This document shows positions 22,494 through 64,000 of a DNA stretch of 64,000 nt, one piece after another. The DNA is taken from the IMG/VR virus record IMGVR_UViG_3300042564_002819, positions 266,025-330,024 of that record; one strand, 5' to 3'. A program made the position numbers and the translations under genes. Numbering within the stretch: position 1 is the first letter of the stretch; every line of letters starts with the position of its first letter. The notes beneath the pieces are model-generated. The model saw only the letters and a list, made by a program, of their open reading frames with translations. It was not told the DNA's origin and made no database searches.

Positions 22494-22526
22494 AAACCCT
22501 CCAGTAGCAATACTAGGAGGGTTTTT
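22494..22526 (+). terminator. Attenuator terminator 1
   Basis: AAACCCTCC-AGTAGCAATACT-A-GGAGGGTTTTT. Confidence 0.85.
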
Positions 22527-22727
22527 CATTATGTGCATATAGGAAACGAGGTCCTACTCAAAGCACTTTAAAAAACAGAGAAACGGGCGGGCTAGTGGAT
22601 GAAATGACCGGAGATAACGGCAGAGTAAAATACTAGCAGGTAATAGTAAAGCACACTCGTTCTGCCGGGCTGCGAACCCGGAATTGGACTGCATAGCGGA
22701 GAGTGTGTTTCACTATTACAAATAATT

Positions 22728-37329: not shown

Positions 37330-40300
37330 ATGAGATTAAGAAACCTTTTTGAAGTACAAGTGCAACCAGGTGAACGCAGAGGATTTTCGCTGCGGTTGAA
37401 GCGTCTTGAAGATTTGCAAGTAAAAATTGCAGAAATACAAAATACTATAAGCGAACTTGGTAATGTTAGCGTTCCAGAAAACTTAAAAAAACAAATGGAA
37501 GATCTTATCGATGCTGCTAAAATAGAAAAAGAAAAAATCTATGCAGAAGTATCTGACGCAGAAGTAAAAAATCCAAGAATTCAAGGAATACCTGGATCTG
37601 TCATGAAGTTACTTAGAGGCATAGAAAAAAATGCTTCAACTATAATGAACGCATACAGAAAAACTGGAAAATATCTCTATAGAGGAATCAAATCTTCCGA
37701 AGACGCACTTTATGGAAAACCTTTTGACATCAGAAAAGCCAAGGATAGTAATGTAGATTTAAGTAATGCATTAAATCAATCCTTAGCAGACCAAGGATTT
37801 AATGCTAGAAGAGACAACACTACTTTTACTTCTGGTTCTTATAATCAGGCTAGTAATTACGGTACTGTGTATATAATATTTCCTAGAGATGGGTTCTCAT
37901 TCCATTACAGTAAAAAGATAAGAGACCTTGTTTTAGATACCGGCAAGATTGATATGTTACTGGATCCCGAAATAACAGGTTATATCGAAAGTGCTATACG
38001 TTCTAACTGGAGCAATCTCAAAAACTATTTTTCTTATAAATTTAGTGGAGATAAATTCTTTACAGGTTATGAATATCAAAAAGATTTAGATGGGTTACAA
38101 CGTGCAGTAGCAGACGGTGTGCTTCCACAAGAATTTGCAAAATATAAGACTTTTTATGATCTAGTTGATCCTGCAAAAGTTATAGCTAATTTTCAATACA
38201 ATCAAACTGATCTCGACAGTGCTATAACTTCCGAACATGAAGTCATGATTACAGGACCGTATTATGCTGTTAAAACAGAGTCCTTTCAAGATTATATTGA
38301 CAAATATATTAAAATGACAGCAAATGGTGAATTTGATGTCACTCCAGATAACAAAAAAGAAAAAACTACTTTAAATCAAAAAATACAATCTATAGTAGGC
38401 GGTTCCGCGCCTGAGTTTGCAATAGGAGATTGGGTGCAGCATAAGTACGAAGGATTTAAAGGTGAAGTTGTTGACTATTACCATACCAATGACTTTGTTC
38501 AAATTAAAGATTATGCCGGAAAACTAAAATTAGTCAATAAGAAAAATATTGATAAAATTAAAACTCCTGAGATGCCCGACTACCAGCCCGGCGATAAAGT
38601 TTATCTAAGAACAAAAGACACAGAATGGGAATATTATAATAATAAAAAATACAAGGTAGTAGACTCTGATAAGTTTACCGTAACAGTTCAAAAAGGCAGT
38701 TACGACACCACAATTACATTACCTAAATTGTTAACCGAACCTGCTCCTAAATTTGATACCAAAGATCCAAGTGTAGGAGACACAGTTCATGTTACCAAGG
38801 GCGATTTTGAAAACATGTACGGAACTATTACATATGTTTCTAGTTACAGTAAAGATATTGATGTTGACTTCGGAGACAGCGATTCGCACACTGTTCAAAA
38901 AGGATCTTACGAAGTTATTGATCCTGCAACAAAACCTGCAGATGCAAACTCTATTGCATCAAAGTTTAAAGAAGGTGATTACGTTAGAATCTCTGACGAC
39001 GGGTTTGATTACAGTGGTCTTGTAGCGGTAATTAATAAACCTGGTTTATCAAAATCAAGAGTATATCCGTTCGGCGAAAAAAGTTATGCTTTAAGTATAA
39101 AAAATTCTAGATTAAAAGCTATTGATGAAGATGAATTTAAAAAACAATCGTTTAGCATAACAGATCAAGTAGTTGTATCTGGCGGCAAGCATGATGGAAA
39201 GAGTGGAAAACTTAATTATGTAAGCTTTGATGGAACTATGGAAATAGTTGTCAGTAGTGGTAACACCATAGAAGTACCCGGAAAATATGTTTTTAATCAA
39301 AACGTAAATGGTTCTCCTGAAAATAACGAGAATAAAGAAACAATTAAAAAAGGTGATTTTGTAAAAATCTCAGACGACTCGGACTTGTTCCCAGGTTCTG
39401 TAGCAAAAGTAGTTGTAAAGAATTCCGGCGAAAAATCTACAATATTAGTAAACAACGACAACAATCTCGATTATATTATTGATACAAAATATCTAACCAA
39501 GATTGATGAAAATGAATTTAACAATAAAAAGCTGTCAACCGGCGACGAAGTCAATGTCACAGACGGATATTATAAAGGAAAAACTGGAAAAATAAAATCG
39601 TTTGGGACTGATGGTCCTGTAAGAGTTGATATAACTTCGCCGTCCACAGGGGATACATTTACAATTAAGGTACTTCCACAATACTTGGAAAAAATAAATC
39701 AAAGCAGTGACGACTTAATTGATTTAATGGATCTTGAGTTTGAACCGATGGACGAGCCTACTGATTTTAAAAATAATGAAACTAAAAAATTTAAAGTCGG
39801 CGACAGCGTAAAAGTAATTAATGGTAAACACAAAGGAAAAACTGGAAAAATAAATTACCTATATACGTATACAAAAGAAGCGTATGTTGACTTCGACGGT
39901 GAATATCACGACATTGAGTTAAAAGACTTAGAGTTAGACAAAGAAGAATCAAAAACTGATAGCAATTTTAACAAAGACGAATTAAAAAAGCTAATCAGTC
40001 AAGGAAAAGAAAAAGGTTTTATAACCTATAATCAACTAAACGATGTAGTGCCTTCGGACAAAGTTACTTCTGAAGAAATTGAAGATATAATGGATATGTT
40101 AAATGAATTAGGAATCAATTTAGTTGATGCTGAAAAAGACTCGGCTCCATCAGGTGAAACTCCACAGGAATTACAAGCAAGAATAAACGATCCAGATACA
40201 AAAGCGTTCCTTAAACAAGCATTTGCAGATCCTGATGTAAAAGAACTAGTGAGTAATATAATCAAAAAGAAAATTATAACAACCGACGACATTGATAATA

Positions 40301-40389
40301 TATCTGTTCTAGTAGGATATGACAAGTATTTGTTTGGCATAAAACCATATATCGAACTTAAAGGCGTTGTATACCAACCTACTACTTGA
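37330..40389 (+). CDS. Multidomain protein: ADP-ribosyltransferase-like domain, about 8 KOW/SH3 repeats, sigma70 region-1.1-like domain
   Basis: LYRG..TFTS..YG..EHE; repeats such as FKVGDSVKVINGKHKGKTGKI; ELKKLISQGKEKGFITYNQLNDVVPSDKVTSEEIEDIMDMLNELGI. Confidence 0.7.
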   Translation: MRLRNLFEVQVQPGERRGFSLRLKRLEDLQVKIAEIQNTISELGNVSVPENLKKQMEDLIDAAKIEKEKIYAEVSDAEVKNPRIQGIPGSVMKLLRGIEKNASTIMNAYRKTGKYLYRGIKSSEDALYGKPFDIRKAKDSNVDLSNALNQSLADQGFNARRDNTTFTSGSYNQASNYGTVYIIFPRDGFSFHYSKKIRDLVLDTGKIDMLLDPEITGYIESAIRSNWSNLKNYFSYKFSGDKFFTGYEYQKDLDGLQRAVADGVLPQEFAKYKTFYDLVDPAKVIANFQYNQTDLDSAITSEHEVMITGPYYAVKTESFQDYIDKYIKMTANGEFDVTPDNKKEKTTLNQKIQSIVGGSAPEFAIGDWVQHKYEGFKGEVVDYYHTNDFVQIKDYAGKLKLVNKKNIDKIKTPEMPDYQPGDKVYLRTKDTEWEYYNNKKYKVVDSDKFTVTVQKGSYDTTITLPKLLTEPAPKFDTKDPSVGDTVHVTKGDFENMYGTITYVSSYSKDIDVDFGDSDSHTVQKGSYEVIDPATKPADANSIASKFKEGDYVRISDDGFDYSGLVAVINKPGLSKSRVYPFGEKSYALSIKNSRLKAIDEDEFKKQSFSITDQVVVSGGKHDGKSGKLNYVSFDGTMEIVVSSGNTIEVPGKYVFNQNVNGSPENNENKETIKKGDFVKISDDSDLFPGSVAKVVVKNSGEKSTILVNNDNNLDYIIDTKYLTKIDENEFNNKKLSTGDEVNVTDGYYKGKTGKIKSFGTDGPVRVDITSPSTGDTFTIKVLPQYLEKINQSSDDLIDLMDLEFEPMDEPTDFKNNETKKFKVGDSVKVINGKHKGKTGKINYLYTYTKEAYVDFDGEYHDIELKDLELDKEESKTDSNFNKDELKKLISQGKEKGFITYNQLNDVVPSDKVTSEEIEDIMDMLNELGINLVDAEKDSAPSGETPQELQARINDPDTKAFLKQAFADPDVKELVSNIIKKKIITTDDIDNISVLVGYDKYLFGIKPYIELKGVVYQPTT

Positions 40390-55897: not shown

Positions 55898-55920
55898 CAA
55901 TGAGTTAACAAAAAATTCCA

Positions 55921-55956
55921 AAAACCCTCCAAGCAAGAAGCTTAGGAGGGTTTTTT
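55921..55956 (+). terminator. Attenuator terminator 2
   Basis: AAAACCCTCC-AAGCAAGAAGCTT-A-GGAGGGTTTTTT. Confidence 0.87.
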
Positions 55957-56102
55957 AATATGAACACGAAAGTTTTAAGAGACTATAAGGCACTACTAAA
56001 AGACTACAACGAAGGCAAAATTAGTTACAAAGAATTTGTTGATCAAACACTTCCGCTGTGGAATAAATTAAACAACTTGTTCGAAAAAGATTAAAAAAGC
56101 AG

Positions 56103-56188
56103 TTGACATAGAGTAAAACATACACTATATTAACTAAACAAACAAAAAATAAAACGTAACGCAAGTTACACGCTCTTTGACAATTTAG
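56103..56188 (+). promoter_or_regulatory. sigma70 promoter, hairpin and boxA-like antitermination site
   Basis: TTGACA-17-TATATT; GTAAC-GCAA-GTTAC; GCTCTTTGACAATTTAG. Confidence 0.7.
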
Positions 56189-56268
56189 ATTTGTTGTTTA
56201 CATCGTAAGATGTAGTAAACAACGCTCACTTAGACGCAAGTCGATAATAGTGGGGGTAAGTAGAGAAT

Positions 56269-56409
56269 GACTCTACTTACACGTATTAACTGGTAGCTGG
56301 TTCGATTCCGGCGTAGAGTCTAGGTGACTATGAAAGGTTTGATTCCTTTGTACTACTGGTGTAGCAAATTGGACGACAGTCCGCCAAGTTAGTACGTGTA
56401 AGTAGAGTC
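56269..56409 (+). ncRNA. Long-stem RNA with two T-loop arms
   Basis: 17-bp perfect stem; GCTGG-TTCGATT-CCGGC and AAAGG-TTTGATT-CCTTT. Confidence 0.55.
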
Positions 56410-56677
56410 GAGCAATTGAATTATTCGATGCTGTGAAGTATTTCTAACAGCATTTGATGATTGTGCCATGTGGTAAAAAGATTGCTTACAGCTAGAAAAA
56501 AGCTGACTACAATAATACACGGTAATAGAAAAGACCAAATCTTTTTTAACATCGTGTATTTATAGAAAAAACTAGTGCAGGAGGATAACTCTGTAAGTCA
56601 CAAGAACAACGGTGCCGCATGACTCAATTGCGGTTAAATTACCCGAGTAGTGCCGGGCAGAGCCAAACACACAATGT

Positions 56678-56753
56678 TCCTCGTTAGCTCAGTTGGTAGA
56701 GTATTTGACTGTTAATCAAAGTGTCGCTGGTTCGAGCCCAGCACGAGGAGCCA
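56678..56753 (+). tRNA. tRNA-Asn(GTT)
   Basis: TTTGA-CTGTTAA-TCAAA; CCA. Confidence 0.93.
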
Positions 56754-56822
56754 AAATTGAGAAGGGGATAAACACGGCAGTCTCATTGCGTAGCAACGGT
56801 GCCCTTTCTTTTAGAATAATGC

Positions 56823-56898
56823 ATCGGTATAGCTCAGCTGGTAGAGCAGCGGTCTCCAAAACCGCGTGTCCTGGGTTCGAATCCTAGTGCCGGTGCCA
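56823..56898 (+). tRNA. tRNA-Trp(CCA)
   Basis: GCGGT-CTCCAAA-ACCGC; CCA. Confidence 0.93.
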
Positions 56899-56905
56899 AA
56901 AATAC

Positions 56906-56997
56906 GGATTGATGGGTGAGAGGCTTAAACCAGCAGATTGCTAATCTGTCGTACCTTGTAAAGGGTACCGAGGGTTCGAATCCCTCTCGATCCGCCA
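56906..56997 (+). tRNA. tRNA-Ser(GCT)
   Basis: GCAGA-TTGCTAA-TCTGT; long arm; CCA. Confidence 0.93.
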
Positions 56998-57008
56998 GAA
57001 TAAGATAC

Positions 57009-57083
57009 GGGCTGTTGGTATAGTTGGGAACACAGTAGCTTTGCAAGCTTCAATCACCGGTTCGAACCCGGTACGGTCCACCA
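57009..57083 (+). tRNA. tRNA-Ala(TGC)
   Basis: G3:U70; AGC-TTTGCAA-GCT; CCA. Confidence 0.9.
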
Positions 57084-57142
57084 AAATAATGCGGGATTAA
57101 CTCAGTGGTAGATAAATACTTTAAATAGGAGATACTCTACCA

Positions 57143-57556
57143 ATGGCTAAAACGTTCAACTGTTTAAATTGTAGTAAAGAAAGTAAATGGAGTTATAGCA
57201 GCACTAACAAGTATTGCAGCGGCGATTGCTTTCAAGAACACAAATGGAAAACTGTAAAAAAACTTGAAGTAGAAGCAGGGTTAGTCAATGACGGAAGCCC
57301 TGCGTTAAAAAAATACCTTGTTGAAACAAAAGGTGAATGCTGTGAAGAGTGCAAAGTTGGCACTGTTTACAACGGAAAGCCATTAACACTAACTGTTGAT
57401 CATATTGATGGTAATAGTGATAATAACTTTCCAGGCAACCTTAGACTTTTATGTCCTAATTGTCACAGTCAAACTGAAACATACAAAGGACGAAACAAAA
57501 AGAATAGTGCTCGTTCTCGATATATGAGAAAGTATAGAGATAATTTGCGGAATTAG
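57143..57556 (+). CDS. HNH homing endonuclease
   Basis: CEEC...LTVDHIDGNSDNN..NLRLLCPNCHSQT; SD AGGAGA. Confidence 0.92.
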   Translation: MAKTFNCLNCSKESKWSYSSTNKYCSGDCFQEHKWKTVKKLEVEAGLVNDGSPALKKYLVETKGECCEECKVGTVYNGKPLTLTVDHIDGNSDNNFPGNLRLLCPNCHSQTETYKGRNKKNSARSRYMRKYRDNLRN

Positions 57557-57621
57557 CTCAGTGGTAGAGCAGGGGTTTTACACACCTCAGGCCGGGAGTT
57601 CGACCCTCTCATTCCGCACCA
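57547..57621 (+). tRNA. tRNA-Val(TAC)
   Basis: GGGGT-TTTACAC-ACCTC; CCA. Confidence 0.9.
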
Positions 57622-57732
57622 AGTTTAGACTGGATATAATCACCCCTTGTGAGGGTGGCCCAAGGACTCAGTAACGAGATACAGCGAAGGGTTGTTGGTC
57701 AAGGCTGCAAACAGCCCAGTCTAAAGCAATAC

Positions 57733-57821
57733 GGACACTTGGCAGAGATGGATTATTGCACCGGTCTTGAAAACCGACGAACCGCAAGGTTCCCAGGGTT
57801 CGAATCCCTGAGTGTCCGCCA
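57733..57821 (+). tRNA. tRNA-Ser(TGA)
   Basis: CGGT-CTTGAAA-ACCG; long arm; CCA. Confidence 0.92.
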
Positions 57822-57897
57822 TAAGCACACTAGCATCAGGCTAGTCCAGACCGTAAGGTTAACGGTGACAAGCGGGGAGAGACCCGCACAAAAATAC

Positions 57898-57974
57898 GGC
57901 CTGTTAGTCGAGTGGTTTAAGATGCCTGCCTGTCACGCAGGAGATGATGGGTTCAATTCCCATACAGGTCGCCA
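57898..57974 (+). tRNA. tRNA-Asp(GTC)
   Basis: CCTGC-CTGTCAC-GCAGG; CCA. Confidence 0.93.
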
Positions 57975-58126
57975 AATTGAAAGGAAGGCTCATAGTTTAC
58001 GTTTAGCCCGTTACGACGGTTTGGGCGGAAAATGGTTGAGTCACGGCACGGGCGGGTCGGGGGCTGCGTGACGGCATTGAACTATGAAGCAGTTGTCGGT
58101 CTGCGTTAACAAACACCGTCAAAATT

Positions 58127-58200
58127 GCGGGTATGGTGTAGCGGTAACATGCGAGCCTTCCAAGCTCTTGTCACGAGTTCGAATCTCGTTACCCGCTCCA
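58127..58200 (+). tRNA. tRNA-Gly(TCC)
   Basis: GAGC-CTTCCAA-GCTC; U73; CCA. Confidence 0.93.
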
Positions 58201-58225
58201 ATTTATCCGTATGTGAGAGGACAAT

Positions 58226-58492
58226 ATGAAAACAGAAGATGAAAAGAGAGAATTTTACGAGCGTTGCTCCTCTATGTTAGGAATAGCTCACGTTTACAAC
58301 ACGCCAGTTCCACGACGCAATAGATGGAACGCAAGACGACTGGGCAACGGACGTTATCCAGGATTTGGACTAATACAGTGCTACGGAAACGGAGCAAGAG
58401 TAGTTAGTCGACAAGGAACACGTATGTTTTATACATACGAAGCAGTTTATGAATATTTGCAGATTGTGCTTGACGCAACTGCAAAAGCGTAG
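58226..58492 (+). CDS. Hypothetical protein
   Basis: SD GAGG; RWNARRLGNGRYPGFG. Confidence 0.7.
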   Translation: MKTEDEKREFYERCSSMLGIAHVYNTPVPRRNRWNARRLGNGRYPGFGLIQCYGNGARVVSRQGTRMFYTYEAVYEYLQIVLDATAKA

Positions 58493-58507
58493 TATAAAAA
58501 CTATAAC

Positions 58508-58583
58508 GCCCTTATAGCTCAGCTGGTAGAGCATCTGATTTGTAATCAGAGGGTCGGCGGTTCAAGTCCGTCTGGGGGCACCA
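58508..58583 (+). tRNA. tRNA-Thr(TGT)
   Basis: TCTGA-TTTGTAA-TCAGA; CCA. Confidence 0.94.
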
Positions 58584-58590
58584 AAATTAT

Positions 58591-58666
58591 GTCGCGTTAG
58601 CAAAAGGTTAATGCGTGTCCTGTGCAAAGGACAAGGACGGTGGTTAAACTCCCCGACGCGACTCCA
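58591..58666 (+). tRNA. Atypical tRNA, Cys(GCA)-like, 8-nt anticodon loop
   Basis: GTCGCGT/ACGCGAC, U73, CCA; TGTCC-TGTGCAAA-GGACA; bulged T-stem. Confidence 0.55.
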
Positions 58667-58672
58667 AATAAT

Positions 58673-58754
58673 GCGGATGTGGTGTAATGGTAGCCACGCT
58701 GGTCTTAGAAGCCAGTGCGTAAGCGTGAGAGTTCGAGTCTCTCCATCCGCACCA
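58673..58754 (+). tRNA. tRNA-Leu(TAG)
   Basis: CTGGT-CTTAGAA-GCCAG; CCA. Confidence 0.92.
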
Positions 58755-58798
58755 AAATATTTCTTATCTTAAAAAGTTTTAAATTTAGAAAGATTAAC

Positions 58799-59242
58799 AT
58801 GCAATTTTATGAAAAAGTAACTTTTTTACCAAGCATTCCAGAAGGTTTAATAAAACCTTTAGATATAATCGAATCGATGCCGAATGTTTTTCCAGATCCG
58901 GATTACGCTCATACTTATGCCAGCTATAAGGCAAATGACGATTTACAAGCTTGGGCACAAAGTTATTTTGACTTTCCTGTACTTGCAAGATATCAGGTAA
59001 TTAAACAACAATTGCCTATTCATGTTGACGTTGGAATTGTAGGAATAAAATATAACTACCTTATTAGCAGGGGTGGTGACGATGTAAAAACAAGATGGTG
59101 GGATAGTGTAGAAAATCCTTCAAAAATACTTTTTGAAACTACTTCGCCATTACGTGTGTGGCACAGCTTAAACATCGAAGTGCCACACGATATAACAGAA
59201 ATTAGTTATCCTAGAATTAGTGTAACTATAAGAAAAAAATAG
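58799..59242 (+). CDS. Hypothetical protein, possibly cupin/2OG-Fe(II)-like
   Basis: PIHVD...PHDI...RISVT; ATG after the tRNA. Confidence 0.55.
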   Translation: MQFYEKVTFLPSIPEGLIKPLDIIESMPNVFPDPDYAHTYASYKANDDLQAWAQSYFDFPVLARYQVIKQQLPIHVDVGIVGIKYNYLISRGGDDVKTRWWDSVENPSKILFETTSPLRVWHSLNIEVPHDITEISYPRISVTIRKK

Positions 59243-59270
59243 TAATAACTTTTTTAAAGAAAAATACTGT

Positions 59271-59346
59271 TGGGAAGTAGCTCAATTGGTAGAGTAGCGG
59301 ACTTTGAATCCGTTGGTTGGTGGTTCGAATCCACCCTTCCCAGCCA
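59271..59346 (+). tRNA. tRNA-Gln(TTG)
   Basis: GCGGA-CTTTGAA-TCCGT; U1-A72; CCA. Confidence 0.93.
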
Positions 59347-59352
59347 AGATAT

Positions 59353-59429
59353 CGGAGTATAGCACAGCCTGGTAGTGCGATGGTTTTGGGTACCATAGGT
59401 CGAGGGTTCGAATCCTTCTACTCCGACCA
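59353..59429 (+). tRNA. tRNA-Pro(TGG)
   Basis: ATGGT-TTTGGGT-ACCAT; CCA. Confidence 0.92.
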
Positions 59430-59646
59430 CGATTAAACTGTTGATCTAACCTCGGACTCGAACAAATAGCCATAGGCTTAGGCAGGTAGTACGGCGGATT
59501 AGTGTTAGACAACATTCGGACCAAGTAATCCGTGAGGTCCAGCTATTAGTGATGGCGGGGACGAACAAGCGGCTGATTTGGTATCAGTCGTGAGGCGGTA
59601 AGCTGCACCATAGGTGTCGTAGGCCGGGACTTGTTCAATTTATTAT

Positions 59647-59724
59647 CTGGGTATAGCTCAGTCTGTGAAGAGTGCTCGCCTTGGAAGCGAGAGGTCGCTG
59701 GTTCAAATCCAGTTACCCAGACCA
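59647..59724 (+). tRNA. tRNA-Pro(TGG), second copy
   Basis: CTCGC-CTTGGAA-GCGAG; CCA. Confidence 0.88.
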
Positions 59725-59731
59725 AAATAAC

Positions 59732-59806
59732 GCGGTGTTGGACAAGATGGATTGTCAGAGGATTCTAAACCTTAGTAGGCAGGATCGTTACCTGTACGCC
59801 GCACCA
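59732..59806 (+). tRNA. Atypical tRNA with CTA (amber-suppressor) anticodon
   Basis: GCGGTGT/ACGCCGC, A73, CCA; D-stem GACA/TGTC; TT-CTA-AA at canonical 32-38; T-loop ATCGTTA. Confidence 0.6.
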
Positions 59807-59889
59807 ATACACACATATGATGCCGTAGCCCGACGCTGGTATGTGTGAAACCTAAATATCGGGCATGTAATTTAATAAAGGAAAGAAAA

Positions 59890-60456
59890 ATGTCGTAGAT
59901 TGAATATGCTTGTAAAGATGTGGTGTTCCACTTTAACAAAAAACACTTGGAAGATGAAACTATTCCGATGTGGGTGATTAAGTTTCGAGGCGAAACCTAT
60001 TATGTAAATCATGTCGAATGTAGTGTTCCGTGGAGTACAAAAGAAACGCCTGATAACAATCACACTAAAGGCAGTATCAAAGTCAAGGATTGTTTAGTTA
60101 TTATTGATGATGAGAACTGTGCTAACATTCGTGTGTTAACTCCAGCAGATCGTTTGCGTCTTACTAAAGAACAAACTGTAAGAGTTATTACCGAGCAAGG
60201 AGCAAAACTGCGTACTGCACTACAGAACATGGCACATGGTCCGATTAAGTTAGCAGGTGGAGGATGTGGCACTACTTGGTATATCACAGATATTCCCAGT
60301 AAGAAACATTTAACAATACTACAACTACAGATTCCTTATATTAGGCAATTGATGCCCAATGAGGATTATTACAAGAAATATGATCAAACATCTTCAGATA
60401 CTGAATGGTTAGATGATGATGACGACTACGAGTGGGAAGACCTTTATGAAAATTGA
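59890..60456 (+). CDS. Hypothetical protein; probable true start 59890 with in-frame TAG at codon 3
   Basis: SD AAGGA; ATG TCG TAG ATT GAA TAT GCT TGT AAA GAT GTG, in frame with track ORF 59920-60456. Confidence 0.65.
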
Positions 60457-60625
60457 AGTGCCTCACTCGTTACTAAAAGAAGTCTGTGCTACAATTCGTC
60501 AATTCAAATTAAGGCACGGGCCATTCTACAAACTGTTAAATAGCTATAGGATATATTTGTATCCAAGTAGTAAATTAAGTTTGTTTTTGATTAAACATTC
60601 TAGCACTGTTACAGTGCTAGAATAA
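60446..60625 (+). CDS. Small hypothetical protein
   Basis: ORF overlapping the upstream stop. Confidence 0.45.
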   Translation: MKIEVPHSLLKEVCATIRQFKLRHGPFYKLLNSYRIYLYPSSKLSLFLIKHSSTVTVLE

Positions 60626-60626
60626 T

Positions 60627-60701
60627 GCGGGCGTAGCTCAGGGGTAGAGCGTCACCTTGCCAAGGTGAATGTCGTGGGTTCGAATCCCATCGCCCGCTCC
60701 A
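60627..60701 (+). tRNA. tRNA-Gly(GCC)
   Basis: TCACC-TTGCCAA-GGTGA; CCA. Confidence 0.95.
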
Positions 60702-60719
60702 ATTGTTGAAAGATATTGT

Positions 60720-61301
60720 ATGAGTAAAATAGAGCACTTTTATCATCTTCCGCACTTCGAAGAAGAATGGTTTACATATTCGGCTTTATATTCTGATATG
60801 GTAGCTAAATTTCCATCCGGAAGTAAGTTTGTTGAAGTCGGTTGTTGGAAGGGAAGATCTGCTGCTTATATGTGTGTAGAAATTGCTAATTCAAAAAAAG
60901 ACATTGATTTTTATTGTGTTGACTTTTGGCATGTATCAGCAGAGCATGAAATAGAAGAACCCCATCTAAAAAATTTGTATGAAATTTTTCTTTCTAATAT
61001 GAAACCAGTTGAAGCTTTTTATAAGCCAATGAAAATACCGTCGTCTGATGCTGCAAAAAAATTTAAAGACGAAAGTTTAGATTTTGTTTTTATTGATGCT
61101 GGACATCAATACGATGAAGTAAAAGATGATATTCTTGCATGGTATCCAAAAATTAAAAAAGGTGGCATACTAGCAGGACATGATTTTTATCCAACTGAGC
61201 CAACTTGGGGAGATGTTTCTAAAGTAGTAAACGAACTTTTTCCAAATAATTATGAAGTTTTAATAGAACAAAGTTGCTTTCTAGTAAATAAGCCGGTATA
61301 G
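60720..61301 (+). CDS. Class I SAM methyltransferase (Methyltransf_24-like)
   Basis: FVEVGCWKGRS, DFVFIDAGHQY, GGILAGHD. Confidence 0.88.
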   Translation: MSKIEHFYHLPHFEEEWFTYSALYSDMVAKFPSGSKFVEVGCWKGRSAAYMCVEIANSKKDIDFYCVDFWHVSAEHEIEEPHLKNLYEIFLSNMKPVEAFYKPMKIPSSDAAKKFKDESLDFVFIDAGHQYDEVKDDILAWYPKIKKGGILAGHDFYPTEPTWGDVSKVVNELFPNNYEVLIEQSCFLVNKPV

Positions 61302-61365
61302 CTGAGTGGTTTAGCAGCTGATTAGTAATCAGCTGACGGGAGTTCGATTCTCTCTACCGGCACCA
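61292..61365 (+). tRNA. tRNA-Thr(AGT), unusual A34
   Basis: GCTGA-TTAGTAA-TCAGC; GCCGGTA/TACCGGC; CCA. Confidence 0.88.
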
Positions 61366-61400
61366 AATCTAAATTTTTTATTAATTAATAGGTATCCAAG

Positions 61401-62156
61401 TTGAAAATAGTCGACGAAAGAAAAGATCCAAATTTTGGAACAGTAATGAATTTTGAACATATTAGTTTGCCTCCTCAAGGGTATAACGGTAAACTGTTTT
61501 TAGATTTTTCTAAGTATGCTAATTTTGATTTTGAAAAAATGGATACAGAAATATGTTTAGCATTATCAAAAATTGATTTAAATAAATATCCTATTGTTTC
61601 GGGGGTTATGCCTCCAAAATTAAAATACGGAATATTTGAAAATGAAGTAATGTACAACTTTACTGGAGATAGAGAAAATTTAAAAAATCTTTCTCCAATG
61701 GAGATGCGTAAATTTTTGTTTTTTAAACACAAAACTCTTTTACCTTGGTTCTTTGTTGTAGACTTAAAACCGAGTCTCTTTTTTGAAAGATCGGAAGATA
61801 AACATCCGTGGAGCGAAGTTAGTAAACTTACTCCATATACAAGACAGTGCATTGAGAGTCTTCCTTTCAAATCAATAGGCAGAGTAGTTATATATGGATC
61901 TTGGCCACAAGCTGAAGTACCATGCCACAGAGATTGGATACCCGACGGTGTTTTCCATCATCATATAAATCTTAATCCTGGTGGATACAGACCAGTCTAC
62001 ATTTATGATCCTGAAACAGATACAAAGAATTATTTACCGGAAAGCTATAAGTTGTATGCTTATCAAACAACCGATTACCACGGCGTAGATGCTCTTACGC
62101 ATTTTAGTTATACAATACGCATAGACGGAATTTATAATGACGACGTAGAATTGTAA
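61401..62156 (+). CDS. Putative 2OG-Fe(II) oxygenase-like protein
   Basis: IGRVVIY...VPCHRD...DYHGVD...IRIDG. Confidence 0.55.
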   Translation: MKIVDERKDPNFGTVMNFEHISLPPQGYNGKLFLDFSKYANFDFEKMDTEICLALSKIDLNKYPIVSGVMPPKLKYGIFENEVMYNFTGDRENLKNLSPMEMRKFLFFKHKTLLPWFFVVDLKPSLFFERSEDKHPWSEVSKLTPYTRQCIESLPFKSIGRVVIYGSWPQAEVPCHRDWIPDGVFHHHINLNPGGYRPVYIYDPETDTKNYLPESYKLYAYQTTDYHGVDALTHFSYTIRIDGIYNDDVEL

Positions 62157-62230
62157 TTTACAAATTTGAAAACGTTAAAAAACGATAATATAAATACTGT
62201 AAATTATTAACAAATAGTGAAATATATAAA

Positions 62231-62992
62231 ATGAATTATCACATAAAAAACTTTATTATCCCTATACATGTCTTATTTTTAGTATCACTAATTGGTATGT
62301 ATTTAAATATAATCGATTTTCATATTTGGTTATTTTTAATAGGGTGGACTTTGATCTATGGGCTAGGTCTTGTTGTAGGATTTCATAAATTGTTATCCCA
62401 TAGCTCTTTTAAAACAAACAAATACATATCTTATGTGTTAGCTTACTTAGGATGCTTAGGAATTAGCGGATCACCTATATGGTGGGCTGCTATACATAGA
62501 GGACATCATCATGCTCATACTGAGACTGAAAAAGACCTTCAAAGTCCACGTCGTGGATGGCTTACATCTTACATAGGTTGGCAGTTTGGTGAAGAAACAA
62601 GTAAAATAAGTTTAAAGTATGCATCTGATTTAATAAAAGATCCTTTTTATCTTTTTTTACACAAGAATTATAGATTAGTTGTTTGGAGTACAGTGATTAT
62701 TGTTGGTATGTTGTCACCATCTGTTGCAGTTTCATTATTAATATTTCCGATGATTGCAGCACACCATGGAGAAAATATTACCAATTCATTTGGTCATAGC
62801 AGGTTTGCTGGTTACAGAAATTTTAATACCAACGACGACACTATAAATAACCCATTGTTAGCATTTATAACTTGGGGTCAGCTTTTGCATAACAATCATC
62901 ATGCTAAGCCAAATAACGATAGTTTTGCCATTAAATGGTTTGAATTTGATCCAACTTCTCCTTTTGTATGGATTTTAAAAAAACTAAAATAG
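62231..62992 (+). CDS. Fatty-acid (delta-9-type) desaturase
   Basis: His boxes GFHKLLSH, HRGHHHAH, LHNNHH; TM helices. Confidence 0.92.
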   Translation: MNYHIKNFIIPIHVLFLVSLIGMYLNIIDFHIWLFLIGWTLIYGLGLVVGFHKLLSHSSFKTNKYISYVLAYLGCLGISGSPIWWAAIHRGHHHAHTETEKDLQSPRRGWLTSYIGWQFGEETSKISLKYASDLIKDPFYLFLHKNYRLVVWSTVIIVGMLSPSVAVSLLIFPMIAAHHGENITNSFGHSRFAGYRNFNTNDDTINNPLLAFITWGQLLHNNHHAKPNNDSFAIKWFEFDPTSPFVWILKKLK

Positions 62993-63049
62993 TTACAATA
63001 TAAACATTTTTCTGTAACAGAAAAAAAATAAAAAAGTTGAAAAAAGTGG

Positions 63050-63127
63050 TTGACCTTTGAGGCAACATGCACTATATTAACTACATAAGCAGCAAATGTG
63101 TTGCTTACACGCTCTTTGAAAATTTAG
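63050..63127 (+). promoter_or_regulatory. sigma70 promoter, hairpin and boxA-like site
   Basis: TTGACC-17-TATATT; TAAGCAGCA-AATG-TGTTGCTTA; GCTCTTTGAAAATTTAG. Confidence 0.7.
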
Positions 63128-63249
63128 TAACTTAACTGCAATAATCAACAGTTTAGCGAAAGGCTAAAGATTGTGGTTGTGCTGAGTAATTAACAGTTTA
63201 AATCAGCAAGTGATGCGTGATTAGGTAAACTGTTGTTTATTGCAGTTTT

Positions 63250-64000
63250 TAAGATGGGCGGCTTAGCGTCCACGTAAGGGTAAGTGCGGTAACGCACCCA
63301 AAGGCAGGTTTCCTATAAACTGCCGCCAGCAATGGTCCACCTAAGCAAGCCTGAACTAAGGTTGACTCGGTTTAACCCGAAAGCAACCTCCGTCCTTAGG
63401 CGGGCGGTAGGCAGTAAGTTAGAGTTGTAGTCCGAAAGGATAGGCACAGAGCCGGTCGGTGAGTGCTAAGAGGCTGTGGTGGCTGAACTGCAACATACCA
63501 AACTAACGAATGCTGAAGGTTAACAGGTAGCTACACTGTCTGAGCCCGCAAGCAAAGGCATGGTAGCATCACAAGAGTGGAAGGGTTAGGCCCCGGATAC
63601 TTGAAGTGACGTTGAGTAGCTCGCAAGGCAAAAGACAGTCGGTGTGTTGTATACTGTATCTAACAAGGTATGGTGCAACTGGGACAGCACATCGAAGTAG
63701 GTTCGCAATATTGCATAACGGTAATGCAATCGTCTTATGAAACGATGGATTGTAGGTTCAACTCCTACTATTGAAACAAAAGCGAAAGACTGTCCCGGTA
63801 CGTTGTGAAAGGTGGTTAATGCCACACTCGCAAGAGAATGTGGTCTACGGATGCTCGCAAGGCTGATGTAGTTGTTCGGAAAGATAGCGTAAGGGTTTAG
63901 CGACTCTGAACTGCTCGCAAGGCAGACGAAGGATAGAAGGACGAGTAGCAACGTGCGACGAGAGAAACGCCACTCTCCAAAAAAGGCACCACTGGGAGAT
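63250..64000 (+). ncRNA. GOLLD-like giant ncRNA (probably truncated by window end)
   Basis: No credible ORF; many GNRA hairpins; GAGTAGCTCGCAAGGCAAAAG, GGTGTGTTGTA...GCAGCACATC-like and AAAGCGAAAGACTGTC blocks resemble GOLLD as recalled; next to tRNA array. Confidence 0.7.

What the first reader, a model, noticed from the sequence alone, without database searches (positions are those of the whole stretch)
56103..63127. rRNA-operon-like boxA leaders driving the phage's untranslated RNA operons
Seen: two promoters (TTGACA-17-TATATT at 56103; TTGACC-17-TATATT at 63050) share CACTATATTAACTA. Each is followed by a hairpin and TTACACGCTCTTTGA(C/A)AATTTAG (boxA core at 56172-56188 and 63111-63127). 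A weaker GCACTTTAAAAA follows a hairpin after terminator 1 (about 22563). Established: rrn boxA (E. coli TGCTCTTTAACAATTT) recruits NusB/NusE for antitermination of long untranslated RNA. Inference: the phage borrows host rrn antitermination to transcribe its tRNA array and GOLLD-like RNA.
Basis: partly seen in the sequence, partly recalled or inferred. Interest (0 to 1): 0.65.

Follow-up and report, generated by a model that had tools for sequence, protein, structure and literature searches.

The report
Ribosomal-type boxA leaders on phage RNA operons
A 330-kb lake phage starts its tRNA cluster and its giant GOLLD RNA with the same promoter-hairpin-boxA leader that bacteria place before ribosomal RNA genes, and dozens of other phages do likewise, so these phages probably use the host's rRNA anti-termination machinery to make long non-coding RNAs.

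Summary
Two sigma-70-type promoters (56103-56131, 63050-63078) are each followed by a hairpin and a 17-nt boxA (56172-56188, 63111-63127). These are the only two copies in the 330-kb phage genome.

The boxA fits the functional consensus GYTCTTTRANA. The site-2 17-mer is identical to a boxA 178 nt upstream of 16S rRNA in a Rhodobacteraceae genome.

Leader 1 precedes a structured 490-nt RNA and 17 tRNAs. Leader 2 precedes GOLLD RNA, which is cut by the contig end.

The architecture is conserved:
- About 30 of 39 distinct IMG/VR contexts holding the 18-mer lie just upstream of same-strand tRNA arrays or GOLLD.
- 29 of 42 distinct leaders have a hairpin ending 1-4 nt before boxA (4.3 expected), with 24 different hairpin sequences.
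- Two cultured roseophages, MD18 and DSS3P8, have boxA, then tRNAs, GOLLD and tmRNA.

Three points fail or need qualifying. The third site (22563) is at chance level. Unit 1 also contains at least three protein genes. About two thirds of the GOLLD loci that can be judged lack boxA.

Nus-factor binding and anti-termination are inferred, not shown. I found no paper linking boxA to GOLLD or to phage tRNA arrays. Verdict: a new member of a known kind, of moderate-to-good interest.

The parts
56083..56102 (+). A-rich tract upstream of the -35 of promoter 1 (UP-element-like)
   Evidence: 13 A in the 25 nt before the -35. Similar A-tracts precede the -35 in relatives.
56103..56131 (+). Promoter 1, TTGACA-17-TATATT; predicted start near 56138
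   Evidence: The -35 TTGACA, the 17-nt spacer and a TAnnTT -10 are conserved in about 40 related leaders. The transcription start is not mapped.
56156..56169 (+). boxB-like hairpin 1 (5 bp, GCAA loop), ending 2 nt before boxA
   Evidence: 29 of 42 leaders have such a hairpin against 4.3 expected.
56172..56188 (+). boxA 1, GCTCTTTGACAATTTAG
   Evidence: It fits GYTCTTTRANA (consensus from PMC5725501).
56193..56254 (+). Hairpin (56193-56223), then a small conserved motif (56225-56254) made of P1, TTAG, a GNRA hairpin, CGATAATA and P1'
   Evidence: Four P1 pairs show compensatory changes across 6 relatives. The same motif follows boxA in L009, L011, L017, L020, L022 and L033. Function unknown.
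56256..56677 (+). Structured spacer RNA. Invariant GTAAGTAGAG (56256, 56398) and CTCTACTTAC (56271) enclose a variable insert with T-arm-like hairpins.
   Evidence: Fold z-score -6.25. Conserved in L059, L015 and L051. No Rfam match.
56678..61365 (+). Array of 17 tRNA genes on the + strand, interspersed with ORFs
   Evidence: ORFs: HNH endonuclease 57143-57556 and methyltransferase 60669-61301.
62231..62992 (+). Fatty-acid-desaturase-like gene, the last gene before leader 2
   Evidence: PF00487, E 5e-16.
63021..63049 (+). A-rich tract upstream of the -35 of promoter 2
   Evidence: 16 A in the 25 nt before the -35.
63050..63078 (+). Promoter 2, TTGACC-17-TATATT; predicted start near 63085
   Evidence: Conserved in 8 other GOLLD leaders.
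63086..63107 (+). boxB-like hairpin 2 (9 bp, AATG loop), ending 3 nt before boxA
   Evidence: Compensatory changes in L051, L019 and L059.
63111..63127 (+). boxA 2, GCTCTTTGAAAATTTAG
   Evidence: It matches 17/17 the boxA 178 nt before 16S rRNA in a Rhodobacteraceae genome (L242).
63128..64000 (+). GOLLD RNA: variable 5' domain, then the conserved 3' domain from 63639 with an embedded tRNA-like element at 63704-63777. Truncated by the contig end.
   Evidence: Metatranscriptome contigs cover 63250-64000 but not the protein genes at 60800-63000.
22563..22574 (+). Not part of the system on present evidence.
   Evidence: One mismatch to the consensus, chance-level frequency, no promoter, not conserved.

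Best explanation
The two elements are rrn-type transcription leaders.

Proposed sequence of events:
1. Host RNA polymerase with its primary sigma factor starts at a strong -35/-10 promoter with an A-rich upstream tract.
2. Within the first 25-50 nt, the nascent RNA forms a boxB-like hairpin and exposes a consensus boxA.
3. Host NusB-NusE(S10) binds boxA. Together with NusA, NusG and SuhB it converts the polymerase into an rRNA-type anti-termination complex.
4. That complex resists Rho on ribosome-free RNA. It may also act as a co-transcriptional folding and processing chaperone.
5. The long tRNA array (about 5-7 kb) and the roughly 0.9-kb GOLLD RNA are therefore completed.

Shown here: the sequence elements, their order, their identity to genuine rrn boxA, their conservation and covariation, and their strict association with same-strand tRNA and GOLLD genes.

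Inferred: the transcription start, Nus binding, protection from Rho, and any chaperone role.
For: 1. The 19-mer occurs exactly twice in 330 kb, both times 25-35 nt after a predicted promoter start and before non-coding genes.
2. It fits the functional boxA consensus GYTCTTTAANA (PMC5725501) except for G at the purine position. That position is G in Aquifex boxA and makes no base-specific contact (PMC3177189).
3. The same 17/18-mer lies 34-299 nt before 16S rRNA in Hyphomicrobiaceae, Rhodobacteraceae, Pirellulales, Omnitrophota, Saccharibacteria, Oligoflexia and Levyibacteriota. This was verified with Rfam SSU for L242 and L243. It also lies directly before bacterial tRNA operons (L080, L116).
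4. Of 39 distinct viral contexts with the 18-mer, 25 have a same-strand tRNA within 700 nt downstream. None has an opposite-strand tRNA. Others lead to GOLLD.
5. Nine GOLLD leaders share the -35, the -10, a hairpin and boxA. boxA varies only at the degenerate positions Y2 and N10.
6. Hairpins: 29 of 42 observed against 4.3 expected, with 24 distinct sequences.
7. In a boxA-independent fetch of 72 GOLLD loci, about 20 have a perfect consensus boxA on the same strand at the 5' edge of GOLLD. Only two candidate one-mismatch sites turned up elsewhere (L177, L231), and both look like chance.
8. Cultured roseophages MD18 and DSS3P8 have a hairpin and boxA, then tRNAs, GOLLD and tmRNA. rrn leaders of their host family carry nearly the same boxA.
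9. The phage has no NusB, NusG-NGN or S10 gene.
10. A consensus rrn boxA binds NusB:NusE about 10-fold tighter than lambda nut boxA (PMC2800207).
Against: - There is no experimental evidence. The transcription start is unmapped, and the RNA data are contigs only, with almost no cover of the leader at 63001-63200.
- The host is unknown, so its own boxA could not be compared.
- 43 of the 63 GOLLD loci with enough upstream sequence have no boxA. Sinorhizobium phage Phosso has none within 4 kb. The other tRNA array of this same phage (22728-30874) has no convincing boxA. The leader is therefore not obligatory.
- No conserved GT-rich boxC was recognised.
- Unit 1 contains translated genes, which lessens the need for protection from Rho.
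- The 11-mer consensus also occurs by chance in AT-rich coding DNA.
Confidence: 0.7

Rival explanations
1. The hairpin plus boxA is the binding site of a phage-specific factor, or an RNA-processing signal, rather than a Nus-factor loading site. The factor could be an N-like anti-terminator or a nuclease such as RNase III or RNase E that releases the leader.
For: A hairpin directly adjoins boxA, as in lambda nut. A second conserved hairpin and a small covarying motif follow boxA. The leader is almost absent from RNA-derived contigs while GOLLD is covered, which would fit removal by processing.
Against: The hairpin loops and stems differ in sequence among 24 variants, so no common protein-recognition loop exists. 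13 of 42 leaders have no upstream hairpin but keep boxA. The conserved part is exactly the universal bacterial boxA, shared with rrn leaders of seven phyla. Processing and Nus loading are not mutually exclusive.
Confidence: 0.12
2. The leader RNA is a decoy. It titrates host NusB-NusE away from host rrn operons and so helps shut off host ribosome synthesis. Effects on phage RNA synthesis would be secondary.
For: The boxA is of the high-affinity consensus type. It sits at the 5' end of RNAs driven by consensus promoters.
Against: The strict placement upstream of same-strand non-coding genes is unexplained by a decoy. There are only 1-2 copies per genome. Leader RNA is not detectably abundant in metatranscriptome contigs.
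Confidence: 0.08
3. The boxA leaders are passive relics, captured from host rrn or tRNA operons together with tRNA genes, and have no function in the phage.
For: Bacterial tRNA operons with the same boxA exist (L080, L116). Phage tRNA genes are often of host origin.
Against: There are two copies with different flanks in one genome. boxA is kept perfectly across many phage lineages while the flanks diverge. Variation is confined to the degenerate positions, and there are essentially no near-miss copies. The hairpins covary.
Confidence: 0.07

Closest known systems
Bacterial rrn operon leader (boxB-boxA-boxC) and the rrn anti-termination complex (NusA, NusB, NusE/S10, NusG, SuhB, S4)
   Same: A consensus boxA, identical over 17 nt to verified rrn leaders. 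The order is hairpin then boxA. The element is promoter-proximal, behind a strong promoter with an A-rich upstream tract. It is followed by long structured untranslated RNA that includes tRNAs. Some phage arrays carry further internal boxA copies, like the rrn spacer boxA.
   Different: It is encoded by a phage and drives tRNA arrays, GOLLD and, in roseophages, tmRNA instead of rRNA. No boxC was recognised. The discriminator is AT-rich. Protein genes are interspersed in unit 1.
boxA in CRISPR-array leaders (Nus factors prevent Rho termination of long untranslated arrays; Stringer et al. 2020, cited from memory; boxA use in arrays also in PMC7862264)
   Same: The same logic: a boxA at the start of a long, repetitive, untranslated array of small RNA genes.
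   Different: Different cargo and a viral rather than a host locus. The CRISPR case has experimental support and this one has none.
Lambda nutL/nutR sites (boxA-boxB with N protein)
   Same: A phage uses boxA and host Nus factors for processive anti-termination.
   Different: In lambda the order is boxA then boxB. Lambda boxA deviates from the consensus and binds NusB:NusE about 10-fold more weakly. A phage N protein binds a conserved boxB loop, and the downstream genes are protein-coding. Here boxA is of the consensus rrn type, the hairpin comes first and its loop is not conserved.
suhB and rpsJ 5'-UTR boxA (Baniulyte et al. 2017, PMC5725501)
   Same: An example of boxA function outside rrn operons, and the source of the consensus used here.
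   Different: There boxA represses a downstream protein gene. Here no ORF follows within 50 nt.

Membership tests
rrn-type boxA (Nus-factor) leader | boxA sequence matching the functional consensus (GYTCTTTAANA in gamma-proteobacteria; purine at position 8) | tested here: met
   GCTCTTTGACA and GCTCTTTGAAA. Consensus. G at the purine position is tolerated. Identical 17-mers occur in Rfam-verified rrn leaders.
rrn-type boxA (Nus-factor) leader | Lies on the transcribed strand shortly after a promoter and before the structural RNA genes | tested here: inconclusive
   Predicted sigma-70 promoters lie 25-35 nt upstream and are conserved in relatives. The transcription start is not mapped, because only contigs of RNA runs were available.
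rrn-type boxA (Nus-factor) leader | boxB-like hairpin 5' of boxA (rrn order) | tested here: met
   Both window leaders have it. 29 of 42 related leaders have it against 4.3 expected, with 24 distinct sequences.
rrn-type boxA (Nus-factor) leader | boxC (GT-rich element) 3' of boxA | tested here: inconclusive
   No conserved GT-rich element was seen. Instead there is a hairpin and a small covarying motif.
rrn-type boxA (Nus-factor) leader | Downstream transcript is long and largely untranslated | tested here: met
   A 490-nt structured RNA plus 17 tRNAs, and GOLLD. However, at least three protein genes lie within unit 1.
rrn-type boxA (Nus-factor) leader | Binds NusB-NusE and confers read-through of Rho-dependent terminators | not testable with these tools
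   Needs binding assays, ChIP and reporter assays.
Lambda-type nut site | boxA followed (3') by a boxB hairpin with a conserved loop bound by an N protein | tested here: not met
   The hairpin is 5' of boxA and its loops vary (GCAA, AATG, GAAG and others). N homologues were not searched for.
GOLLD RNA (Rfam RF02032) | Match to the covariance model of the conserved 3' domain | tested here: met
   136 bits, E 1e-36, model positions 1-336 of 416, cut by the contig end. Homologues 84-88% identical in L019, L035, L038 and L051 score or align full length.

The most novel reading that the evidence does not exclude
Phages recruit the host rRNA anti-termination complex mainly as a co-transcriptional RNA chaperone, not only to escape Rho. 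Holding the 5' leader at the polymerase would promote the long-range helices, the processing of tRNA arrays and the correct folding and assembly of GOLLD nanocages. On this reading the boxA leader would define a general 'phage non-coding RNA operon' (tRNAs, GOLLD, tmRNA and still unnamed structured RNAs). It would also give the first handle on how GOLLD is made in vivo.
Probability: 0.25. Interest if true: 0.8.

Novelty: new member of a known kind. Interest (0 to 1): 0.6.

Why it matters
GOLLD is one of the largest bacterial and phage non-coding RNAs and forms RNA-only nanocages, but its biogenesis and function are unknown. The 2025 structural paper does not mention promoters, leaders or Nus factors. 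Phage tRNA arrays are widespread, yet how multi-kilobase untranslated arrays escape Rho is not discussed in the literature I could search.

A conserved rrn-type boxA leader gives a concrete, testable mechanism. It is also present in cultured, genetically tractable, non-pathogenic systems: Ruegeria pomeroyi DSS-3 with phage DSS3P8, and Phaeobacter inhibens with phage MD18.

The finding extends the known reach of boxA (rrn operons, lambda nut, suhB, CRISPR arrays) to viral non-coding RNA operons. It also offers a simple sequence marker for finding new phage non-coding RNAs, namely whatever follows a phage boxA.

Tried and rejected
- **Third boxA near 22563.** One mismatch, chance-level frequency, no promoter and no conservation. 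Rejected.
- **Host identification.** The exact 18-mer occurs in rrn leaders of at least seven phyla, so it does not name a host. GOLLD similarity to roseophage and Sinorhizobium phage GOLLDs, and a weak hit to Agrobacterium phage Atu_ph07, hint at an alphaproteobacterial host, but only weakly. The phage has no tmRNA.
- **Survey of Rhodobacteraceae rrn leaders by pattern.** Only 5 of 101 genomes hold the exact 17-mer, and 3 of 101 hold boxA at a fixed distance from 16S. Draft genomes mostly lack assembled rrn leaders, so this was uninformative beyond three examples.
- **boxA as a universal feature of GOLLD.** Rejected: 43 of the 63 loci that can be judged lack it, and these are typically preceded by tRNA-Met.
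- **Reverse-strand boxA pairs near some GOLLDs.** They lie in a conserved AT-rich coding gene and are chance matches.
- **Phage-encoded NusB, NusG-NGN or S10.** None found.
- **The KOW and sigma-region-1.1 protein as a partner of the leaders.** It is absent from five other jumbo phages that carry boxA or GOLLD.
- **RNA reads.** Only contigs were available, so there is no start, strand or level information.
- **Cultured-phage search with the leader itself.** Only chance hits.
- **Formal covariance model of the leader.** Not built. Hairpin lengths differ too much for an ungapped alignment, so a fold-and-shuffle test was used instead.


Full report
**Setting.** The window is the last 64 kb of a 330,024-bp IMG/VR phage contig (GC 37%, CheckV completeness 93%, linear). 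The phage has an rIIA homologue like those of T4-like phages. It carries 33 tRNA genes, 30 of them in the window. It occurs in lake-water metagenomes from at least 14 studies.

**The observation.**
- Each site has a near-consensus -35/-10 pair with a 17-nt spacer and an A-rich tract upstream.
- The region around the -10 is shared.
- A hairpin ends 2-3 nt before a 17-nt motif, GCTCTTTGA(C/A)AATTTAG.
- The 19-mer including this motif occurs twice in the window against 0.06 expected. It occurs nowhere else in the 330-kb genome, even with up to 4 mismatches.
- The third, weaker site at 22563 exists as a string, but it is one of nine one-mismatch matches on that strand. It lacks a promoter and is not conserved. 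I do not count it.

**What lies downstream.**
- After leader 1 come a long hairpin, a small conserved motif and a strongly structured 490-nt RNA with no Rfam match (fold z-score -6.25).
- Then come 17 same-strand tRNA genes at 56678-61365. They are interspersed with real protein genes: an HNH endonuclease, a methyltransferase and a desaturase-like gene. 'Untranslated operon' is therefore only partly right for unit 1.
- After leader 2 comes GOLLD RNA. Rfam RF02032 matches at 63639-64000 with E 1e-36 and is cut by the contig end. The variable 5' domain starts right after boxA, and a tRNA-like element is embedded at 63704-63777.

**Is the motif a boxA?**
- It fits the experimentally derived consensus GYTCTTTAANA (PMC5725501), apart from G at the purine position. 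That position is G in Aquifex boxA and makes no base-specific contact in the NusB-NusE-boxA crystal structure (PMC3177189).
- A scan of one genome per prokaryotic species found the same 18-mer 34-299 nt upstream of 16S rRNA in Hyphomicrobiaceae, Rhodobacteraceae, Pirellulales, Omnitrophota, Saccharibacteria, Oligoflexia and Levyibacteriota. It also found it directly before bacterial tRNA operons.
- For two Rhodobacteraceae genomes I confirmed with Rfam that SSU rRNA starts 178 and 166 nt after the motif. One of these boxAs is identical, 17 of 17, to the window's site 2.
- The motif is therefore a genuine rrn-type boxA of the high-affinity consensus kind. Published Kd values for NusB:NusE are 5-8 nM for rrn boxA against 80-90 nM for lambda nut boxA (PMC2800207).

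**Conservation in other phages.**
- An exact-match scan of IMG/VR returned 49 loci.
- In 39 distinct contexts, 25 have a same-strand tRNA within 700 nt downstream and none has an opposite-strand tRNA. Several more lead to GOLLD or are cut by contig ends. Only about five look unrelated.
- The first tRNA is often Asn, as in the window.
- Rfam places GOLLD 550-1045 nt downstream of the motif in L010, L031 and L035.
- BLAST shows that L011, L019, L038, L051 and L059 have the same two-leader layout as the window: leader, spacer RNA, tRNAs, second leader, GOLLD.
- Across nine GOLLD leaders, the -35 TTGACA, the -10, a hairpin and boxA are kept while the rest diverges. boxA varies only at the two positions that are degenerate in the functional consensus (C/T at 2; A/C/T at 10).
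- Among 42 distinct leaders, 29 have a hairpin with dG of -3 kcal/mol or better ending 1-4 nt before boxA, mostly exactly 2 nt. Shuffles predict 4.3. The hairpins have 24 different sequences. The structure is conserved and the sequence is not.
- In five large, mostly complete relatives (200-380 kb), the extended boxA occurs 0-2 times per genome, each time before same-strand tRNA or GOLLD genes.

**An unbiased look from the GOLLD side.**
- I fetched 72 GOLLD loci with a pattern taken from the conserved 3' domain, independent of boxA.
- About 20 of the 63 loci with enough upstream sequence have a perfect consensus boxA on the same strand at the 5' edge of GOLLD. These fall into at least six unrelated leader families, some again with covarying hairpins.
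- The other 43 have no boxA there. Allowing one mismatch adds only two sites (L177, L231), which look like chance. These loci are mostly preceded directly by tRNA-Met.
- The boxA leader is thus a common solution, but not a universal or obligatory one.
- Matches to the bare 11-mer also arise by chance in AT-rich coding DNA. This is why context, not the 11-mer alone, carries the argument.

**Cultured relatives.**
- The window's GOLLD is 68-71% identical to those of Phaeobacter phage MD18, phage DSS3_MAL1 and Sinorhizobium jumbo phage Phosso. It also aligns over a short stretch (78%) with Roseobacter phage DSS3P8 and Ruegeria phage vB_RpoS-V10.
- MD18 and DSS3P8 each have one boxA (GCTCTTTGACAATTTGG), preceded by a hairpin. 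It is followed on the same strand by 5-6 tRNAs, GOLLD and an alphaproteobacterial-type tmRNA.
- An rrn leader in their host family carries GCTCTTTGAAAATTTGG (L243).
- Phosso has no boxA within 4 kb.

**Expression.** Only assembled contigs of RNA runs were available. In two freshwater metatranscriptomes, contigs cover GOLLD from about 63250 to 64000 at high word depth. They do not cover the protein genes at 60800-63000, and they barely touch the leader at 63001-63200. This fits an abundant, possibly processed GOLLD RNA, but it says nothing about the start site. Many of these contigs are only 90-95% identical and so come from relatives.

**Mechanism.**
- Host polymerase starts at the strong promoter, and boxA emerges within the first 25-50 nt.
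- Host NusB-NusE and the other Nus factors assemble an rrn-type anti-termination complex. The phage encodes no NusB, NusG-NGN or S10 of its own.
- The modified polymerase completes long ribosome-free RNA that Rho would otherwise terminate.
- The known chaperone role of this complex in rRNA folding (PMC4807359, PMC10250234, listed) suggests a second function. It could promote the long-range helices seen in the spacer RNA and the folding of GOLLD.
- All steps after 'the sequence is a consensus boxA in the right place' are inference.

**Rivals.** The alternatives are a phage-specific factor or processing signal, a Nus decoy, and a functionless captured relic. Each explains less of the pattern, as set out in the rival explanations.

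**Novelty.** boxA-dependent control is established for rrn operons, lambda nut sites, suhB and rpsJ, and CRISPR arrays. Full-text searches found no paper connecting boxA or Nus factors with GOLLD or with phage tRNA arrays. The 2025 GOLLD structure paper does not mention leaders, promoters or anti-termination. I therefore rate this as a new member of a known kind, with good experimental access through the roseophage systems.

Noticed in passing
window 37330-40389 (+): A 1019-aa ORF with several KOW motifs (NusG/Spt5-type, around residues 483, 738 and 823) and a C-terminal sigma-70 region 1.1 domain (881-941, E 2e-20). The N-terminal part is weakly similar to Agrobacterium jumbo phage Atu_ph07. 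It may be a phage transcription-elongation or RNAP-modifying factor. It was not found in five other jumbo phages that carry boxA or GOLLD.
   Followed up: partly
window 56225-56254; also L009, L011, L017, L020, L022, L030, L033, L041: A small conserved RNA motif directly after boxA: helix P1, (C)TTAG, a short GNRA-type hairpin, CGAT(G/A)ATAG, then P1'. Four P1 pairs show compensatory changes in six relatives. It has no Rfam match. The GATGA-containing internal loop is reminiscent of a kink-turn or C/D-like loop.
   Followed up: partly
window 56256-56407: An invariant 10-mer GTAAGTAGAG occurs twice (56256, 56398), with its complement CTCTACTTAC at 56271. Together they enclose a variable 100-170-nt insert that contains T-arm-like hairpins (GGTTCGATTCC). 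The flanks are invariant in six relatives while the insert differs. This could be a processing stem or a cassette-like element, and alternative pairings are possible.
   Followed up: partly
L239 (Phaeobacter phage MD18) 1622-5129; L241 (Roseobacter phage DSS3P8) 1901-5038: These cultured roseophages have an unannotated GOLLD RNA and an alphaproteobacterial-type (permuted) tmRNA directly behind a boxA-led tRNA array. None of these RNAs except the tRNAs is annotated in the GenBank records.
   Followed up: yes
L017 7250-8356 / L251 1501-2805; L030: In a 201-kb phage, the boxA leader is followed by more than 1 kb without a tRNA, an Rfam match or an obvious ORF before the next tRNA. This may be another, unnamed structured RNA led by boxA.
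   Followed up: no
L059 (JBIKJV010000260.1, 3,149 bp): This contig is binned in a Lake Mendota Phycisphaerales MAG. It is 92-94% identical to the window's leader-1 spacer RNA and carries both phage-type leaders, tRNAs and the start of GOLLD. It is most likely a phage fragment mis-binned into the MAG.
   Followed up: partly
window 58591-58666 and 63704-63777: ARAGORN reports two tRNA-like genes with abnormal anticodon loops, one with a 2-nt 'gc' and one with a 4-nt 'tatg'. The second is the tRNA-like element embedded in GOLLD.
   Followed up: no
window 22497-22727: The first tRNA array (22728 onward) directly follows a strong terminator, with no recognisable sigma-70 promoter or boxA in the 200-nt structured gap. 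How this array is transcribed is unexplained.
   Followed up: partly
window 55960-56094 (+): A 44-codon ORF with a GGAGG Shine-Dalgarno sequence formed by the 3' arm of the terminator at 55920-55957. It is squeezed between that terminator and promoter 1 and has no family match above threshold.
   Followed up: no
GOLLD loci L178-L238 (many from sample 3300045988): In about two thirds of GOLLD loci there is no boxA. Instead tRNA-Met sits immediately at the GOLLD 5' edge (586-655 nt before the core motif), with tRNA-Ile or tRNA-Arg about 335-345 nt after it. All tRNAs near GOLLD are on the GOLLD strand.
   Followed up: partly
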